A stretch of DNA of 64,000 nt, from positions 100,354,782 to 100,418,781 of the forward strand of contig NC_085842.1 of the NCBI RefSeq assembly GCF_035594765.1, given 5' to 3'. Source of the stretch: Anolis carolinensis. Lineage: Eukaryota. Position 1 is the first letter of the stretch. Every line of letters begins with the position of its first letter. The notes under the pieces were generated by a model. The model ran no database searches. It saw nothing but the letters and a program-made list of their open reading frames with translations, and was not told the origin of the DNA. Shown here in pieces: positions 1,323 through 33,245 of the stretch. A program made the translations under genes and the position numbers.

Positions 1323-2427
1323 GAGGACATTGGTTCTCTAAAGTAACAAAGCATGAGTTCTATATGTGTGCTTAATCTTTGAGGAGAGATCACTTCTGTC
1401 CTGAGTCCAGAAGGCAAATATGTGCAGTGCCTCATACTTCTTCTGTTCCTACTTCTGTGCAATAATCAAAACTCTGCTGAGAAAATGATAAGAGGTTGAG
1501 ATCAGAAATCAATTCACACTCTACAAATATAGCACTGTGATTCCACTTTGATTACCATTGTTCCATCCTTTAGAATCCTAAGATTTGAACAAGTGGCTTT
1601 CCATTTTCTTCCTTATGCACCAAGATTCAACCAACCATGGTTCAAAAATATCTTGGCTTGTGTGTGTGTGTGTGTGTGTGTGGGGGGGGGATCTTAAAAG
1701 CAAACCTTTATCTCATGAGGAACTGAACACTATGCTGATTTGTAGATAAACCATGTTTCAGCCTTCCACAATTTTGCATATCCTTAGGTGGTTCGAAGCC
1801 CAGTTGGTGTGAGCACCCAACTGGCAAGCCCTTCTCACTGTTTACCTAAGCAGTTCGAAAACAACTGACCTATTGCCAACTGACCAGAAAAACCGCAGAT
1901 CTCCCTGCTCATGTGCCTTTGAAAATAATGGGAGCTGCAGACATGGAAGCAAATGAAGCTTTTCATAACATGGGAAAGAAGCATTCTCCTTTGGCTAATA
2001 TCTGAGGATCAACCTGCCATCAAAGGCCTCAGGTCAAACTGGCCAATGTACACCAAGTACAGCAAGAACTTGGGGACTTCCGGTTGGTGTGAGCTGAGGC
2101 AGGCTGCGTCGGCAGAGCGCTCCTGCTTTTAACTTTATTTACTTGTTTTCACTAGCCAAGTGTTTTATTGCCCCAGTCTTTTAACAGTCAGGGAATGTGT
2201 TTACGTTCCCCTCTGCTCATTTCTCACTACTGGGAACTTGCAACCATACGGCAACAACAAGGCAAAGGACAACTGAAAACAAACTGAAGATCTTCCACTA
2301 CAATGAATAACACCAGAGATTCTGAAGAGGTACAGTGACTGCCTTTGGAACAAGGGAAAAAAACATGCTGTGGAGGAGTGTCAGGATTGTCTGATAAGTT
2401 GAACTTTTTTTTTTTTTTTTAAAAAGT

Positions 2428-4411
2428 ATGGTTTACACAAGAAATAATTATAAGGAGAAAGCCTTGCCTTTACACTCCCTTATAGCGGGGAAGAAACATA
2501 GACAATCTAAGATGACTCAATTCTTTCCCCTGGAAAAGACTCAACAGGGACAGCTGGTAGATGAGGAGGAGGAGAATCCAGGGATCACAAGAGTGGGCAA
2601 TGCTAGTATGCCTGCTGATGAACTGAAGGACTGGCCGATTAACACCAAAGGGCTATCACTAAAGGAGAGTTATATTGTGGATTCAGGAAGTAGGAGAAGC
2701 TTGGCGGAGGAGTTGGCGCAAGCCAAGTTTGAAAGTCCCGATGCAACTGTAAAACAACACTGGGACTGGAACCCAACACCAGAAAAGCCCCCAACCTCAT
2801 TTTCGGAGAAGGGACACTTTAATTCCTTCACACCCAAGAAGTTCTTACAGCAATATTCCCATCTTGATTTACAACAAGGAGAAGAATTGAATGAGGGCTA
2901 CTCACACCTGGAAGCCAAGTTTAATGCCTTTTCTAATGATTTGCTGGTAATTAAGAAGTATCTACAAGAAAGCACAGGGCTCCTGAGCACACTTGCAAAA
3001 ATACTTAAAGCTGAAGTTTTGGAAAGCCGGTGCAACTGTGATTCTACTAAGGCAACGCCAGCTGTTATCATTCCTGTTACAACCAGGCAGGACACAGCTT
3101 CTCCCTGCCCTAAAGATAAAAGAACTAAACAGACAAAAGCAGATAAAACCAAACGCCTCCAAGTCAACTGTAAGAGCCAGAAAAAAACCATGAACATTAA
3201 AGGGAATTGGAAACAAAAAACCATCTGCAAACAAACAGGACGCACCAGGAATTGTAAACGCGGATTAAAGAAACTTTTAACATTAATCCCACCCTCAAGA
3301 ACTTTGGTAACAAAGAAGAGGGGAAACAAAAAAGGTCTTTCAAAGCGGAGACACGGTACTACCAATGATGGCAAAGTGGTTAGAACCAGAGTAGCCAATC
3401 AAGCCCCCCAAAATATTAATGCGGCAACACAAACCTTTTGGGAAACTCAGGTCACCAATATGACAAGAGAGAAGGATGATAGGAACTCAAAGAAAATAGA
3501 GAAAGCAGATGGATCTAAATCGCTAATGGCAAACCACCAAAACTGTAGACAAAAGATTAATGACAGAAAACATTATAAAGATAATTGGAACCTGATCCTC
3601 ATCCCAAACAAGGTGGTGTTTATTAAAGTTCCTAATCCGGGAAAGCTCTCAAGTCTGGATGATCGTAAATCCCATGTGATAAGTCTTATGAATAATGTTT
3701 TACCAGGGGGGTTGTATACCACTGATATAGACCAGATTGATTATTTGTATAATGATGCACTCTATGTTGATGCCATAGTCTCCTTTATTGACCTAAATAT
3801 AGCTAAGAGCTAGGGACTTATTTGCAAAAAAAGGCATCACAATAACAAGATTTTTCCAGAAGATCCTCACTCAAGGAGCCTCAGATGGCACAAGGAAATT
3901 GGAGGACCAGCAACCAGCGGTCAAGGGGAGAAGTGGACAGTTGCTGAGCCCCCTTGAGGTCCAAGCTGCCGGGCCCACAATTGAGGGAAAAGGTGCCCCC
4001 AGCCAGGGGAACCAGTTTTGCTTGGAGGAACAGTCACTGGTAGAGGCATATGCGAATTTGCCAAGAAAGGAGCAATGGGCTATCCTAGATAGATTACAGG
4101 TGCTAAGTGATCACCTAGGGGAAATATACTCAGAAAGGCCATATTTAAATGAAGAAGGACATACCAGCCCAAGGGAATGGAAAAGAACAGCGCAGGATAA
4201 GTCAAACTGGCTGGAGATGAGATTTTTGGACCCTGAGGAAAGAGCAGATCCACCCATTAATCACTTCCCACTGACTCCTGAAGTGAAAGTTGTGAAACCG
4301 CAAATTATTAATCCATGTGTGGTTTATGACAATGACCTTACTATATGCCCTTGGGATGCTCCTATGGGTACTGAAATAGAGGACAAGGGATCAATTGCCA
4401 AAAAAGCATGA
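2428..4411 (+). pseudogene. LINE ORF1 (one frameshift near 3805)
   Basis: 461-aa ORF 2428-3813. After a frameshift, RARDLFAKKGITITRFFQKI... runs into the 3899-4411 ORF. Lys-rich and positioned upstream of ORF2. Confidence 0.7.
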
Positions 4412-4447
4412 AGGCCAGATGGGAGGGCTGAAAAGGTAGGGCCGCAC

Positions 4448-7400
4448 ATGAGAATTACACCAGCAAACAGAAATTGTGGTTTGAAACAGACCTCAATCAC
4501 TCAATTCTTTCCACCTACAGTGCCTGGAAATAAAGAGGATAAGGCAAAAGTCCCTGCAGAGGAAAACTCTATTCATTCACTCAAAAATAGGGTTATCCAG
4601 ATAGTCAGTCGTCAGAGGACAGGAGGGTTATCAAATCTGACTAAGAGACAGCACAATAAACTAGTAGAACTTAGGCATGCTGAATCACACCCAATTGATT
4701 CTGGCTTGAACAACCATATAAAAATGAAAACAGCAAAGGAGCTAAAGATGCTGTCCTGGAATATATCTGGATGGGCCGGAAAACTAGTGGATAAAGAGTT
4801 TGTAGAATATTTACAGGAGTTCTCTATTATAATGTTACAGGAAACTTGGGTGGAAGAAACCTCAAATCTTAATTTGCAGGGTTTTAGAAGTTTTGCAGTG
4901 CCCATAAGTGGGGGCGCTGCTGTGGGGGCTTAGCAGTTTTTGTTTCAGTCGAGCTAGATGCTGAGTGTCAAATTGTGACTAATAAGTCTAACAATAATAT
5001 ATTAGCTGTAGAGATAAAACTCAAGGATAACCAGGTTTTATTTTGTATTAATGTTTATGTGCCTCCAGTAAATTCAGCATATTCTGCCAAAGAGGTGTGG
5101 CGGTTTTTAGATACAGCCTTGGAAGATAGGACCAGTGGCTTGGAAAATACAAACATTGTTTTAGGAGGTGATTTTAATGCGAGGATGGGAAAATCAAATG
5201 AGGATCTAGCTCAGCATTTTGGGTTTTATTTAGAAAATCAATTCTCACTTAATAGAAACTCAAGAGATGTGAAATTTAATAAGAATGGGCTGGAACTTTT
5301 CTTACTAGCCTATAAACATTTTTAATTAATCATGAATGGCAGCCATCTAGAGGAGTCATCCGGACTATACACTTATCACTCAGTAAGGGGGGGAAGTGTT
5401 CTAGATTATTTTATAATCTCACCTGGGTTGTTGCCGGCAGTCAAAACTTTTATAGTGGACATACGTCCGGAAAGTGACCATCACCCCATTAAACTAGTCA
5501 TAAAAACAGACGTAGAGCAGCACAGAGTGTCAAATAATTATCATCTGGACCTGGTCTCCATGGGACCCAGACGACTCAAGTGGTCGGAGCCCTTGAGCGA
5601 TAAGGTTATAGACCTACTTAATGGACCTATTCTGGAAACTTGCAGAGAGAAGATACTCAAATGTACTATTGACCCAATAGAGGGTTATCAGCAAATTGTT
5701 ACCTCCCTTAAACCATACCTGATTCACACAGAACCAACCAAAGTCAACAAGTCCAGTAAGGGAAGCTGGTTCGATGCAGAATGCAGGAGCCATAAAAAAG
5801 ATCCTATCCCTGGCCATCAGAGCAGCCAACAAAAATGGGACAGAACAAAACTATAAAAGCCTGAGTGAAACCCGTTCACAATATAAAACCCTACTAAAAA
5901 GGAAGAAACTTGAATTCAACAGGCAAAATTGGATAAAGCTGGATCTGGCAGTTAGGCAAAAGGATGAGGTCAAATTCTGGAATATGGTGCGTTCAGGGCT
6001 AAGGCCCTTGCAACCTCATTTAGACTCTCAAATTGCAGCACCTACATGGGAAACTTATTTTAGAGAAATATTCAGTGACCCAGAGACTGCCAAGGATGTG
6101 TCTAGACCCATTGACCCCCCCTGATTGGACACCAGTTTCTCCAGAGAAAATCGAAGGCCTGCTTCAAAAATTAAAAACAGGAAAAGCCCCAGGAGAGGAT
6201 ATGCTACCTCCCGAATTGTTTAGATGTAACATCACCTGATGGGCTCCCATCCTGGCCAGACTGTTTACATATATCAACCAGACAGGAATCATCCCAAATG
6301 GGTGGAAAACTAGTATAATTGTCCCTTTATATAAAAAAGGCAATAGGATGGACCCACGCAATTATAGACCTATTAGCCTGTTGGATGTAGTGTCAAAAAT
6401 CTATGGTAGGTTTCTGTTAAATAAATTACATAGCTGGGCAGAGAAGAATAATATTATTGCAGAAGAACAGGCCGGATTTCGGCAAGGCAGAAGCACAATA
6501 GACCAATGTTTTGTGCTTTCACACCTAATCCAAAATAGTCTGAAGAAACCAAAGGGACATGGCATTTGTGGATTTTACCTCAGCTTTTGACTTAATTGAC
6601 AGACAGCGTTTGTGGGAAAAGTTGGCGAAGACTAATGTGGATAGACGACTGTTGTCATTATTGCATCAGCTATATTCGGGGACAGACCTAAGAGTGAGGT
6701 TAGGTCTGTCAGGCAAGCTATCGAGCAACATTGAAACAAAAAGAGGAGTTAGGCAAGGCTGTTTGCTAGCACCTTTTCTGTTTAATTTCTACATAAATAA
6801 TCTAGTTGCCGAGTTGAGCTCCCCTGACCACTTCCCTCCATTAGGAGGTAGTAGGAAAATCCAAGTCTTGTTGTACGCGGATGACATGGTCCTCCTGTCA
6901 ACTATGCAAATAGGTCTCAGGAGACTTTTGAGGTCACTAAGTAGAATCTGTGAACAAGAAAAGCTGATGATCAATCACTCTAAAACCAAAGTGATAGTAT
7001 TTTCCAAAAGGAAGCAAATACATACATGGAAATTGGATGGCCACTCAATAGAGCAGTGTCATAGCTTTAAATACCTGGGCATACACTTCTCATATAATGG
7101 GAACTGGAAGAGCCATATAGAGGCAGCCAAATTATCTGCTTGGAGGTCAGTGAAATCAATCCTAGCCTTTGGGAAAACAAAGGGAGGCTCCTTGGTATGT
7201 CCCACAGTAAAGATTTTTGCTGTTAAGATTTTACCTCAGCTGTTATACGGAGCAGAAATTTGGGGACAGGGTAATACAAAACAGGTTGAATGTATTCAGA
7301 ACAAGTTTGCAAGAGCTCTTTTAGCCCTTCCCCCTGGGACCCCAGGTGCCTTGTTAAGGCTTGAATTGGATCTTCCCTCACTTAAGGCCAGAATGCATAA

Positions 7401-8076
7401 GCTTAACATCTCATACGGGAAGAGACTTCTGGGAATGGAGGATGAGGGTATAACAAAGCAATGCATGATGGAGCAGCATAAGCAAGGAGGGTGGGTTCAA
7501 TACTGGCAAGCCTTGCTCCATCAGTATTTTGATGGGTCAACAACAACTCTAATGCATCTGGACAAGAAGGCGATCAGAGATAAAATCTTTGAGATGGACG
7601 CAGCTGACAACCTGCAGATTAGTAAACAGCAAGGTTTCTCTACCTGGTATCCCCGACTAAAGAGTGACCAATATTGTCAGCAATATCTTCAAGACCTAAC
7701 GTCGGCAGTCCTGAGGAAAGCATTTACAGCCCTGCGCTTCCAAACAATGCCATCAAACTGGCTAGAGGGAAGATACAGAGGGATCCTCCATGTCCAACGA
7801 CTTTGCATTTGTGGCACAGGGGAAAAAGAAGATCTAACACACTATCTGCTACACTGCCCCTTGTATAAGGATCCTAGGAAAAATCTCCTGGGAACACACT
7901 TGGAAGAAAGGGCAGCATGGCAACAATCTGCTGTGATCTGTGACTTGCTAGCAGATTATTCCAAAAATATAACACTAAAGGTTGCCACATTTGCAATTGC
8001 AGCCCAAAAGATCAGAGCTAAAGTAGCAAAATCCATACTCGAGGTCAGAAATGGAAATGGTGATGGTTTGGGATGA
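4448..8076 (+). pseudogene. LINE ORF2: apurinic-like endonuclease, reverse transcriptase and C-terminal Cys/His knuckle, broken by several frameshifts and a stop
   Basis: APE motifs SWNISG, LQETW, GDFNAR, LDYF, SDHHP. RT motifs KAPGED, NYRPISLL, QAGFR, AFVDF.SAFD, GVRQGC, LLYADD, FKYLG. C-terminal CICG...HYLLHCPLY. Confidence 0.93.
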
Positions 8077-8783
8077 TACAAATCAGACACTGTCATTGTT
8101 ATGTTGCTGCTTTCATAATTTTAAAGAGCTAGTTTTAATTTTTGAATAAGTTTTAATGTTTATATTGGAAAGTGTTTATAAAGGTTGTATATTATTGATG
8201 TCATGGCCTATGGCTAGTACAATAAACAATTCATTCATTCATACAGCATATCCTTAGGTTCTCTCTGGCATTTGTTTCAGTTGTTTGACATTTTATATGA
8301 GGGCAACATTTTAGCTATATATAATGGGAGCATCCATGAATTTTGATATCAATTGGGGGGGGGGGGTCATAGTACCAAATGCCAATGGCTATCCGAGGGT
8401 CAAGTTTAATTTGGCCAAAAGGCAAACTCCAGGATCCCATAGATTTTGGAACCATGGCACTCAGAACCTCATCATGTGGAAGTTTTCCTCCCTTTCTACA
8501 CATTTCTACACACTTCAAAGACGGACTCACACAGAGCTTATCAAACAACGGAGGGCTGCTTTTGGTGGTTGCTTGTGGGATTCCGTCTCTGCAGCGTGTA
8601 AAGAATTTCAAAGATGGGCAGTAATAGACTTCACTTCCTGCACTTAAAAATTGGTATTTTCCCTTGTGAAGTGAAGTAGCTGATTTGTCCGATGACTTTT
8701 TGATGTTTCACTGTGGATGTTCATGTGGGCAATGCTCCTTCTGCCAATGCTACTTCTGTTTCCATTAGTGGTTTAAAGTGCAT

Positions 8784-28946: not shown

Positions 28947-31312
28947 GTAAGAAGCTTACTTCAGTGCTTCATTCTATACTCTAACAGCTCAATTATAAGA
29001 ATGGATAGTGCTGTAGAAACTTTCTTACTAAAACACAATGCTTCTTAGTGGTCCTAATGGGTGGAGGATTGTGAGAAATAGTCCAAAAAATAATTATTTT
29101 AAGCTCTGGGATGACTTCATAAACATTCCTAACCATAGAAGCAACTGCATCAATTCACCTAGATAGTTTGACTCGTGTCTGAACTGTAGGTCACTCAAAG
29201 TTTAGCAACCACAGAGCCAGGTCTGTGGATGTTATGAGGTTTGTCATGAAACTGATTGTTTACATATTCAGAATACTGTATCTTCATTATAAGATAAGGG
29301 GTAAAACAAATTGTGTTATTTTGCAATGGAGGAAGTAATACTTCCATCCCACAAGCAAGTCTCATTGTATAGATCTTTAGCAGGACAAAGTGATGCACTT
29401 TATGATAGAATTATTGTGTAAAAGGGTCTTTGGGAATGGTATAATTAAATCTGTATTTGGTGTGTCTTCAGGGAGAGGATAACAATATTGGCCAGATATT
29501 ACTCTATTGAAGTAAATAAAAATTTCCATCAAGGGTTACTCCAGACTCAGGATTATTAAAACTATCAACTTGGATCATGTGGTGTTCTGCGCTCCATCAG
29601 TGGAGTGGACTATTACTATATTAGAGATGATATATTAGGGTAATAATTCTCTCATAACCAGAAGCGACTTGCAACATGCAACCAAACAAACCAACGTACC
29701 TTTTCAGGACCAACTATGACAATAATCTCAATCAATATCAAAGGCATGTCAGCTGCTAAAGAACAGCTGCTTTATGAACTGTGCCGAGATAAGAAATGTG
29801 ACATGTTGTGTGTCCAAGAAACACACAGGGATAAACAACAGAAATGACCCAAAATTCCAGGAATGATCTTAGTGGCAGAAAGACCATATGCACAGTATAG
29901 AAGCCCTGTCTTTGTAAAACCAGGCCTCCAAGTCAGCAGTAACCATAACACTGAAGAAAACAATAAAGAGTTTATAACAGTAGAGCTTAATAACATCACA
30001 ATTACCTCTATGTACAACCCCCCAAATGAAGAGTTTTGTTTCTCCTTTCCTGAGAACTTTGATAGGCACCAAAGGACTGTAGTAATTGGTGACTTTAACA
30101 GCCATAACCATGTATGGGGCTATGCTCAGGAGGACAAAAATGGAGAAGCTGTCCTTTCCTGGGCTGAATTGTACAAACTATCTCTTATTCATGATAAGCT
30201 CCCACCATCCTATAACAGTGGGAGATACACTGAGGATATAACCCAGACCTTCTATTTGTGAGTGACAGCATTGTGTAGCAATGCACTAAATCAGTGGGAC
30301 CACCAATACCAAACACACAGCATCGGCCAATAGTATGCCAAATGTTCCCAACTATAAGGCCTCAGGAAGTTTGATTTAACCAAAGATTCAACTTCAGAAA
30401 GGTAGATTGATCTAAATTCTCAAACATGTTAGATGATAAGATCATATTGGTTGCCCCAATCCCTGAGGAATACGAGCGCTTTATCAAAATAGTAAAAACC
30501 TGCTCACGGGCTTCTATAACGAGAGGCTGCAAAACACACTGCCTTCAGTGCATTACTCTGATACAGCTGCCTTGTTGGAAGATGATTACAGGCTCCACAA
30601 TGAAGAGCCATTTAATGAGCAAACTCTTTAGGCACTGCAGAGCATTTTGTCATCCATCTCTAAAGCGAAGAAAGAACAGTGGATAAAGCTGATAACAGAA
30701 GTCAATATGGGCAGGAGCAGTCAGAAGACATGGAGGCTGTTAAGACGGTTGAGCAATGATCCCTCACAAGCGAATACCCATGCTCACATAAAGGCAGATT
30801 AGATAGTGCATCAACTTCCGAAGAATGGGAAACCCAACCTTTCCACCAAAGTAGAAAGGAAACCAATAGTTAGACAACCAGATAATGAGATCAACAACTT
30901 TCATGAACCTTTTACATCTACTGAATTGGACATGGCCCTCAATAAATGTAAAAATGGCAAAGCTGCTGGCCTGGACGATCTACAGATGGAACAAATTAAG
31001 AACTTTGCCCCAAAAGCAAGGTGCTGGCTGCTGAAGCTGATGAACAACTGCATTGCATCCTGTCAGATTCCCAAAATCTGGAGGAAAGCAAGAGTCATAG
31101 CCATCTTGAAACTAGGCAAAGACCGCAATGACCCAAAAAGCTATAGACCAATCTCCTTGTTGTGCCATGTTTACAAAGTTCTGGAGAGACTTATTTTGCA
31201 TAGAATTATGGAAAAAATAGACCCATGTATGATTCCACAGCAAGCTGGCTTCAGGAGAGGCAAAAGCTGCACATCATAAGTATCAAACCTGACTCAGCAC
31301 ATAGAAGATAGG

Positions 31313-32804: not shown

Positions 32805-33245
32805 AAGTTCTGGTGTGCAGAACTTGGCGACCTTATAAGTTATAGCCAAGTTTGTATCTGAAAGCAGCAGAGAGATGGAAAATTGTCCAGAGTGCCCTGG
32901 GTGCTTATATAGGCATAGCATAATGACGCGGGATTGAATTTCTCTATAGAACAGGCACAGAAGAAGCACATATTCTATTGTCTCTATGTGTCCTGAATCA
33001 CAGGGGCACAGTCTCTCAGCATATGGGGTCTTCCGGTAACAACCTTCCAATACGGCAGATGGGAGGGCCTGGCAACATGCCAGAGTGAAGGCCCTCCAAT
33101 GGCTAGAAACCTCTACCGTCATTAGATATTTCATAGGAGAGGTACAAAACCTACTGACTGCATCGATAATAAAGGATGGGCCATTGGCTAAGTCCAATTG
33201 GCGCTCAATGTCACTCATGTATTCCATAACTGAGATAGAAGGCAA
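32805..33245 (-). mobile_element. RTE-X-like LINE ORF2 C-terminal fragment
   Basis: RAFTLA...LPSAVLEGCY...ERLCPCDSGHIETIEYVLLLC is homologous to the C-terminus of the 4448-8076 ORF2 but diverged. Confidence 0.75.

What the first reader, a model, noticed from the sequence alone, without database searches (positions are those of the whole stretch)
2503..4510. Two canonical PCNA-binding PIP boxes, one near the N-terminus of each LINE protein
Seen: ORF1 residues 26-33 read QSKMTQFF (2503-2526), and the ~100-aa extension ahead of the ORF2 endonuclease reads QTSITQFF (4487-4510). Both are preceded by a basic residue and followed by P, while the surrounding sequence is unrelated. Known: the PIP consensus is Qxx[ILM]xx[FY][FY] (p21 has QTSMTDFY), and human L1 ORF2p has one PIP box between EN and RT. 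The ORF1 copy also has T at position 5 and K at +4, a partial CRL4-Cdt2 PIP-degron pattern with Q instead of D at position 6. Inference: this RTE-X-like family may load both proteins on PCNA, multivalently if ORF1p oligomerises, coupling insertion to replication or repair forks or timing ORF1p turnover. I know of no description of this arrangement.
Basis: partly seen in the sequence, partly recalled or inferred. Interest (0 to 1): 0.8.

Follow-up and report, generated by a model that had tools for sequence, protein, structure and literature searches.

The report
PCNA-binding motifs on lizard LINE proteins
A full-length but broken jumping gene (LINE) of an Anolis lizard carries a textbook PCNA (DNA sliding clamp) docking motif in the floppy N-terminal tail of its RNA-binding protein. 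Three related LINE families keep it or nearly so, and a second copy ahead of the enzyme's nuclease is seen only in this family; no binding has been tested.

Summary
Each fits the strict PIP consensus. The chance of one within the first 40 residues is about 1e-3 per protein.

The element is a full-length LINE (1790-8245) with a 14-bp target-site duplication, and is multi-copy in two species labels. The family ORF1 runs to the TGA at 4409-4411, about 660 aa.

- **ORF1 motif:** supported as a conserved short linear motif. It recurs in a sister Anolis family (QAKMTDYF), in an intact element from a Logan assembly (QSKITQYF) and, 7 of 8, in a Pogona-like family (QTKITDFA). A fifth family keeps only a remnant. 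Flanks are unalignable. In an AF2 model of the intact homologue it lies in a disordered tail before a long helix and an L1-ORF1p-like RRM.
- **ORF2 motif:** no cross-family support. Five related ORF2 N-termini lack it, and one more subfamily replaces the region with unalignable sequence.

PCNA binding is inferred, not shown. The partial PIP-degron pattern is real but incomplete. The RTE-X label was not tested. I found no paper describing a PIP box on a LINE ORF1p. Verdict: a new variant of a known kind, of moderate to high interest.

The parts
1776..1789 (+). 5' copy of the 14-bp target-site duplication
   Evidence: Exact 14-mer shared with 8246-8259.
1790..8245 (+). Full-length two-ORF APE-type LINE, 6456 bp, decayed copy of a multi-copy family
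   Evidence: Bounded by the TSD. Pfam endonuclease and RT hits. Contig depth rises from the 5' end to the 3' end in four public runs of two species labels. 3' end has AATAAA followed by (ATTC)3.
2428..3803 (+). ORF1, first part (up to the private 11-nt deletion)
   Evidence: ORF list. 88% and 44% identical Anolis carolinensis proteins P0001 and P0002. Other copies carry 11 extra bases behind 3803.
2503..2526 (+). PIP box 1, QSKMTQFF, ORF1 residues 26-33, with K at +4
   Evidence: Aligned with QAKMTDYF (P0002), QSKITQYF (L004), QTKITDFA (L003) and HPQITPYL (L001). The only PDB sequence hit of the 25-aa peptide is a p21 peptide chain (4rjf_B, E 1.2).
2911..3021 (+). Predicted long helix (putative coiled coil) of ORF1p
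   Evidence: Aligns with L004 ORF1 helix 141-187 in the AF2 model. Oligomerisation is inferred only.
3583..3862 (+). RRM-like domain of ORF1p (interrupted by the deletion at 3803)
   Evidence: Aligns with L004 ORF1 residues 330-426, pLDDT about 90, beta-alpha-beta-beta-alpha-beta. Best Foldseek match is the human L1 ORF1p trimer 2ykq, followed by generic RRMs.
3806..4411 (+). ORF1, second part (listed as a separate 170-aa ORF), ending at TGA 4409-4411
   Evidence: The frame follows from the 11-nt difference. P0002 reads the same frame across the junction. Homologous to the C-terminal part of L004 ORF1 and to cobra L002 9983-10501 (E 6e-5). Helical hairpin at 4019-4129.
4412..4447 (+). 36-nt spacer without stop codons; ORF2 lies in the same frame as the family ORF1
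   Evidence: The same in-frame TGA layout is found in L004, L003 and L001.
4448..8076 (+). ORF2 (N-terminal extension, APE endonuclease from 4742, RT with YADD at 6874-6885, Cys/His motif at 7804-7857), broken in this copy
   Evidence: ORF pieces and Pfam. Lesions private to this copy: 13 nt missing behind 4902, stop at 5323-5325, 1-nt differences near 5793 and 6115, 8 nt missing behind 6556. A further stop at 6237-6239.
4487..4510 (+). PIP box 2, QTSITQFF, residues 14-21 from ATG 4448
   Evidence: No counterpart in related ORF2 N-termini. Shares 14 identical nucleotides with PIP box 1.
8246..8259 (+). 3' copy of the target-site duplication

Best explanation
The ORF1 protein of this squamate LINE group has four parts: a disordered N-terminal tail, a long helix, an RRM, and a C-terminal helical hairpin. 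The tail carries a canonical PCNA-interacting peptide of the form [KR]-Q-[ST/A]-K-[IM]-T-[QD]-[FY]-F. It most likely docks the ORF1p/RNA particle onto DNA-loaded PCNA. If the helix makes trimers, as in L1 ORF1p, three tails would face the three pockets of the PCNA ring. That would bring the particle to replication or repair sites, where target-primed reverse transcription can start. The window's own family has added a second, equally canonical PIP box in a roughly 100-aa extension ahead of the ORF2 endonuclease. This either gives the enzyme its own handle or, if ORF2 is made by read-through of the in-frame TGA, sits as a linker motif in an ORF1-ORF2 fusion. What is shown: the motifs, their conservation in ORF1, the disordered context and the domain layout. 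What is inferred: PCNA binding, oligomerisation and any effect on insertion.
For: Both motifs match the strict consensus. Chance is about 1e-3 each for the first 40 residues. The ORF1 motif is kept in P0002 (44% identical ORF1 with a 25-aa insertion just upstream) and in L004 (intact element, ORF2 37% identical). It is kept 7 of 8 in L003 (ORF2 38.5% identical). MAFFT places all of these in one block, with 45% identity inside against 13% in the flanks. The aliphatic position 4, T5 and the aromatic at position 7 are present in 5 of 5 sequences, and Q1 in 4 of 5. The tail is disordered in the AF2 model (pLDDT about 30, residues 1-133), upstream of helix 141-187 and an RRM with pLDDT about 90. 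The best fold match is the human L1 ORF1p trimer. The only PDB sequence hit of the ORF1 peptide is a p21 (Cyclin-dependent kinase inhibitor 1) peptide chain, 4rjf_B. No well-supported difference from other copies falls inside either motif in runs of two species labels. Precedent: PIP boxes on the pogo/Tigger transposases and on human L1 ORF2p, the latter required for retrotransposition (PMC5371812, PMC10830420).
Against: No binding data or complex model could be made here. One related family (L001) keeps only a remnant, HPQITPYL, so the motif is not indispensable. The ORF2 motif has no cross-family support and lies in a segment that a diverged subfamily replaces. The read table was truncated (1156 differences not shown), so within-family conservation is only weakly shown. 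Only five ORF1 families could be collected, and MAFFT may have anchored on the motif itself. The role of the human L1 PIP box is itself disputed, since a different PCNA site has been proposed (PMC7617806).
Confidence: 0.55

Rival explanations
1. The ORF1 motif is a PIP degron. It binds chromatin-loaded PCNA in order to recruit CRL4-Cdt2, so that ORF1p is destroyed in S phase or after damage. This would be either host restriction or self-limitation, rather than a way to target insertion.
For: T at position 5 is invariant in all five ORF1 motifs. TD is present in P0002 and L003. A basic residue sits at +4 in the window copy (K), L004 (R) and L003 (K).
Against: No single family has the full pattern. 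The window and L004 have Q rather than D at position 6, P0002 has S at +4, and L003 lacks the second aromatic. The ORF2 motif has V at +4. Degron rules are taken from general knowledge, not tested here.
Confidence: 0.15
2. The ORF1 motif is a conserved short linear motif for a partner other than PCNA, for example another protein that reads a hydrophobic FF or YF peptide. Its fit to the PIP consensus would then be coincidental.
For: Conservation shows constraint, not the identity of the partner. PIP-like, RIR and MIP motifs overlap (general knowledge). L003 and L001 depart from the strict PIP pattern at position 8 and position 1.
Against: Three families match all four defining PIP positions, and the only PDB sequence hit is a p21 peptide chain, 4rjf_B.
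Confidence: 0.15
3. Only the ORF1 motif is functional. The ORF2 motif is a recent, neutral by-product, for example a short patch copied from the ORF1 5' region or a chance match in a fast-evolving, probably disordered extension.
For: It is absent from five related ORF2 N-termini. L004 ORF2 starts directly at the endonuclease. The segment 4328-4615 is replaced in a subfamily of the second species label. A 14-nt identity with the ORF1 motif hints at copying.
Against: A strict consensus match in the first 40 residues is expected only 1.5e-3 of the time. The flanking basic residue and the P are also shared. A roughly 82%-identical subfamily still aligns across 4366-4537. The 14-nt identity is only about 1 in 32 once the amino acids are given.
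Confidence: 0.35
4. Both motifs are chance matches in a decayed element.
For: The loose consensus occurs 22 times in the six-frame translation of the window.
Against: Joint probability is about 1e-6 for the N-terminal positions. The ORF1 motif recurs in independent families.
Confidence: 0.02

Closest known systems
Human LINE-1 ORF2p PIP box (residues about 404-419, between endonuclease and RT)
   Same: A canonical PIP consensus on a LINE-encoded protein. It was reported to mediate PCNA association and to be needed for retrotransposition (PMC10830420, PMC5371812).
   Different: In L1 it is a helix packed against the RT palm and fingers inside the tower/NTE region, and a different PCNA contact (the PUB motif in the wrist) has since been proposed (PMC7617806). 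Here the motifs sit in N-terminal tails. One is on ORF1p, which has no reported PIP box in L1, and the other lies ahead of the endonuclease. There is no sequence homology.
Pogo/Tigger/Lemi1 transposase PIP box
   Same: A transposon protein with a conserved PIP box. Pogo was found as a PCNA interactor (PMC5371812).
   Different: These are DNA transposases, a different class of element and a different protein. The functional meaning is also unresolved there.
Cellular N-terminal or terminal PIP boxes (p21, and from memory DNA ligase I, MSH6, POLD3, Cdt1)
   Same: Same consensus, with basic residues in front and a location in disordered termini. The p21 peptide chain 4rjf_B was the only PDB sequence hit.
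   Different: These are host replication and repair proteins. Resemblance to those other than p21 is recalled from memory, not tested here.
L1-type ORF1p (coiled coil, RRM, C-terminal domain)
   Same: A long helix followed by an RRM whose best structural match is the human L1 ORF1p trimer.
   Different: No Pfam match. It has a long basic disordered linker and a different C-terminal helical hairpin, plus an N-terminal PIP tail. The trimer state is not shown.

Membership tests
Canonical PIP box (Qxx[ILM]xx[FY][FY]) | Q at position 1, aliphatic at 4, aromatic pair at 7-8 | tested here: met
   QSKMTQFF and QTSITQFF. Chance is about 1e-3 each.
Canonical PIP box (Qxx[ILM]xx[FY][FY]) | Lies in an accessible, disordered segment | tested here: inconclusive
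   Met for ORF1 through the intact homologue L004 (residues 1-133, pLDDT about 30). A shallow alignment also lowers pLDDT. The ORF2 extension was not modelled.
Canonical PIP box (Qxx[ILM]xx[FY][FY]) | Conserved against diverged flanks in relatives | tested here: inconclusive
   ORF1: met in 3 families strictly and in a fourth at 7 of 8; degenerate in a fifth. ORF2: not met in five related N-termini.
Canonical PIP box (Qxx[ILM]xx[FY][FY]) | Binds the hydrophobic pocket and Q pocket of PCNA | not testable with these tools
   No multimer modelling or binding assay is available.
PIP degron (CRL4-Cdt2 substrates) | T5-D6 within the PIP box | tested here: not met
   The window ORF1 and ORF2 both have T-Q. 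TD is seen only in P0002 and L003.
PIP degron (CRL4-Cdt2 substrates) | Basic residue at +4 after the box | tested here: inconclusive
   ORF1 has K (met) and ORF2 has V (not met). L004 has R, L003 has K and P0002 has S.
Human L1 ORF2p PIP box | Position between endonuclease and RT, as part of the tower/NTE helix | tested here: not met
   The ORF2 motif lies about 80 residues before the endonuclease start at 4742.
L1-type ORF1p | Coiled coil plus RRM architecture | tested here: inconclusive
   AF2 gives helix 141-187 (pLDDT 55-65) and an RRM at 330-426 (pLDDT about 90). The Foldseek top hit is 2ykq at E 3e-3. No Pfam family was found.
RTE-X (RTEX) clade of LINEs | Placement by RT phylogeny with labelled reference elements | not tested
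   No labelled reference set was available. The long two-domain ORF1 and the 6.5-kb size do not by themselves decide between RTEX, Vingi or another clade.

The most novel reading that the evidence does not exclude
In a group of squamate LINEs the RNA-binding ORF1 protein, not the enzyme, is the sliding-clamp adaptor. A trimeric ORF1p would present three N-terminal PIP boxes to the three pockets of PCNA, and some families add a further PIP box on ORF2p or on an ORF1-ORF2 read-through fusion. If so, clamp recruitment has arisen independently in LINE lineages and can be studied on a clean, disordered-tail motif instead of the disputed buried helix of human L1.
Probability: 0.35. Interest if true: 0.75.

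Novelty: new variant of a known kind. Interest (0 to 1): 0.6.

Why it matters
PCNA is the best-known host factor tied to LINE-1 insertion, but how it is engaged is disputed. The L1 PIP box is a helix packed against the RT, and a different contact has since been proposed. A separate LINE group that keeps a textbook PIP box in a disordered tail of ORF1p would be independent evidence that clamp recruitment is a recurrent LINE strategy. It would assign a new role to ORF1p. It would also give a simple test system of peptides and FF>AA mutants for linking retrotransposition to replication or repair.

Tried and rejected
- **HMMER search with the ORF2 N-terminal piece.** All 90 hits from 1.84 billion representatives align only to the endonuclease start. 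None aligns to the first 55 residues of the extension, which hold the motif, and none has a PIP box.
- **Profile word search for ORF2.** It gave no Anolis ORF2 of this family, but it did give the relatives whose contigs were useful.
- **Word search with the five-family ORF1 alignment.** It returned only the query itself, so it was unproductive.
- **Exact look-ups of P0001 and P0002.** Neither is on record, so the ORF2 of the sister Anolis family could not be read.
- **Cobra and Phrynocephalus loci L002 and L006.** No ORF1 N-terminus is preserved in either.
- **Distant marine relatives L007-L010.** They have a different ORF1 and no N-terminal PIP box.
- **PDB peptide search.** It found nothing for the ORF2 motif.
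- **Rfam on the 5' end.** No match.
- **Clade assignment from papers.** The Vingi paper is not held, and the others do not settle it.
- **An idea I held and then dropped.** I first took the 170-aa ORF at 3899-4411 for the N-terminus of ORF2, which would have made PIP 2 internal. The 11-nt difference, the reading frame of P0002 and the ORF1 of L004 show that it is the C-terminal part of ORF1.
- **What I did not build.** concatenated the ORF pieces inside a script only to shuffle their composition, and nothing was printed or saved.
Full report
**Observation.** Translating 2503-2526 gives QSKMTQFF and translating 4487-4510 gives QTSITQFF. These are residues 26-33 of the ORF at 2428-3813 and residues 14-21 of the ORF piece at 4448-4933. 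Both follow a basic residue and precede a proline. Pfam places the endonuclease start at residues 102-146 of the second piece, and RT domains follow downstream. Composition-preserving shuffles give 7.5e-4 (ORF1) and 1.5e-3 (ORF2) for a canonical PIP match within the first 40 residues. The window has no N runs and holds only this one copy of the element.

**Anatomy of the element.**
- A 14-bp direct repeat at 1776-1789 and 8246-8259 brackets a 6456-bp insertion, 1790-8245. It ends in AATAAA followed by (ATTC)3.
- Contigs of four public runs, from two coded species labels, cover the element. Depth climbs about 20- to 100-fold from the 5' end to the 3' end, the usual mark of a 5'-truncating LINE family.
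- The same call shows lesions private to this copy. Eleven bases are missing behind 3803 and 13 behind 4902. There is a stop at 5323-5325. One-base differences lie near 5793 and 6115, and 8 bases are missing behind 6556. A further stop lies at 6237-6239.
- Because of the 11-base difference, the family ORF1 does not end at 3813. It continues in window frame 2 (3806-4408) to the TGA at 4409-4411, giving about 660 aa.
- Three observations support this. P0002 reads the same frame across the junction (versus the translation). The intact ORF1 of L004 (649 aa) aligns with both halves. No well-supported difference from other copies is listed at 4409-4411, although one is listed 10-12 bases further on, at 4421.
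- ORF2 starts at ATG 4448, after 36 nt without stop codons, in the same frame as the family ORF1.

**Relatives.**
- The ORF1 word search found only two proteins, both from Anolis carolinensis: P0001 (88% identical, an N-terminally truncated model) and P0002 (44%).
- ORF2 relatives were found with HMMER and a profile word search, and their contigs were then fetched.
- L004 is a Logan assembly holding an intact element: ORF1 of 649 aa and ORF2 P0007 of 1113 aa, with RT 37% identical to the window.
- L003 and L001 come from one ENA sample. One of its proteins (P0053, encoded on L001) clusters at 90% with a Pogona vitticeps protein. Their ORF2 C-terminal (RT-bearing) parts are 38.5% (L003) and 46% (L001) identical to the window's 505-aa piece.
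- L002 is a decayed cobra copy.

**The ORF1 motif is conserved.**
- P0002 has QAKMTDYF at the corresponding place, despite a 25-aa insertion just upstream.
- L004 has QSKITQYF at residues 20-27.
- L003 has QTKITDFA, 7 of 8 defining or shared positions.
- L001 has only HPQITPYL, after a lysine-rich run.
- BLAST cannot align these ORF1s to one another outside the Anolis pair. MAFFT nevertheless stacks the five motifs in one block.
- Identity is 45% inside the block and 13% in the N-terminal flanks. The aliphatic position 4, T5 and the aromatic at position 7 are present in all five, and Q1 in four.
- The alignment may be anchored by the motif itself. The independent test is therefore the roughly 1e-3 chance of a strict match in the first 60 residues of L004 or P0002.

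**Context in the protein.**
- An AF2 model of the intact L004 ORF1 is poor overall (mean pLDDT 44.9; six-sequence alignment) but has clear islands.
- Residues 1-133 are disordered (pLDDT about 30) and hold the motif.
- Helix 141-187 follows, then a long basic disordered linker.
- A beta-alpha-beta-beta-alpha-beta domain at 330-426 has pLDDT about 90.
- A helical hairpin lies at 488-524.
- The best Foldseek match is the RRM of the human L1 ORF1p trimer (2ykq, probability 1.0, E 3e-3), followed by ordinary RRMs.
- The 25-aa window peptide around the ORF1 motif finds a single PDB sequence, a p21 (Cyclin-dependent kinase inhibitor 1) peptide chain, 4rjf_B (E 1.2).

**The ORF2 motif is not conserved across families.**
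- P0007 starts directly at the endonuclease.
- P0104, P0053, P0022 and the cobra model P0062 have extensions of about 25 to 135 residues without any PIP-like motif.
- Among 53 relatives with an extension, only one (P0114, TGTIDKFF) has even a Q-less look-alike just before the endonuclease.
- In the second species label, one subfamily replaces 4328-4615 with 273 unalignable bases. A roughly 82%-identical subfamily of the first label still aligns over 4366-4537.
- The two window motifs share 14 identical nucleotides over the T-Q-F-F-P codons and nothing else. Given the amino acids, that is about a 1 in 32 event, so copying from ORF1 is possible but not shown.

**Mechanism.**
- The most likely reading is that the ORF1p tail is a PCNA-docking peptide, and that the window's family has gained a second one on ORF2p.
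- The predicted helix and the L1-ORF1p-like RRM make a trimer plausible. That would match the three-fold PCNA ring. This step is inference.
- The degron reading has partial support: T5 is invariant and a basic residue sits at +4 in three of four ORF1 motifs. No family shows the full pattern.
- Nothing here shows binding.

**Literature.**
- Full-text searches found PIP boxes only on human L1 ORF2p and on pogo-type transposases.
- No paper combines PIP degron and retrotransposon.
- The L1 motif is a helix packed on the RT (PMC10830420), and a different PCNA site has been proposed (PMC7617806).
- I therefore rate this a new variant of a known kind.

**Limits.**
- Only five ORF1 families were available.
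- The ORF2 of the sister Anolis family could not be read.
- The read table was truncated, and contig sequences are not shown.
- The clade label was not tested.

Noticed in passing
window 4409-4450; L004 1979-1996; L003 1426-1452; L001 2243-2254: In all four related families ORF1 ends in TGA and ORF2 follows in the same frame after 6-36 nt without a further stop. Three of the four have TGA-C, and in L003 the gene call for ORF2 starts at TTG, with no ATG at that point.
   Followed up: partly
window 2428-2490: The first 21 residues of ORF1 (MVYTRNNYKEKALPLHS...) are 16/21 identical to P0002, far above the 44% overall. L004 shares an N-Y..KEKA patch directly before its PIP box. This may be a second short motif or a constraint at the RNA level.
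   Followed up: no
L007 2364-2381; L008 651-668; L009 2317-2334: Distant marine-metagenome relatives keep a Q-less PIP-like SILG[FY]F followed by two basic residues near the C-terminus of their otherwise different ORF1.
   Followed up: no
window 7507-7530: A third consensus match, QALLHQYF, lies in the C-terminal region of ORF2. It is not kept in P0007 or P0077, and about 0.05 such matches are expected by chance per ORF2. It is probably meaningless.
   Followed up: partly
window 1790-1830 and 2083-2100: The element's extreme 5' end holds an inverted repeat (CCAGTTGG...CCAACTGG), and a similar GGTTGGTGTGAGC word recurs about 290 nt downstream. There is no Rfam match in 1700-2500. Earlier notes of this scan report structured RNAs at RTE 5' ends.
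   Followed up: partly
window 2405-2420: A T16 run lies 7 nt upstream of the ORF1 start codon.
   Followed up: no
window 4469-4699 (ORF2 residues 8-84): There is a weak Pfam hit of the ORF2 extension to the AIB family (Aurora kinase A and ninein interacting protein), E 0.088 and below the cut-off. It may be seeded by the PIP-like stretch.
   Followed up: no
window 31130-31267 and 32817-33131: Two short fragments of other LINE reverse transcriptases (47% and 32% identical to pieces of this ORF2) lie on opposite strands.
   Followed up: no
window 3826-3832: An A7 run inside ORF1. The database model P0001 reads a different frame from here on, so its C-terminus is probably a frameshift artefact of that copy.
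   Followed up: partly
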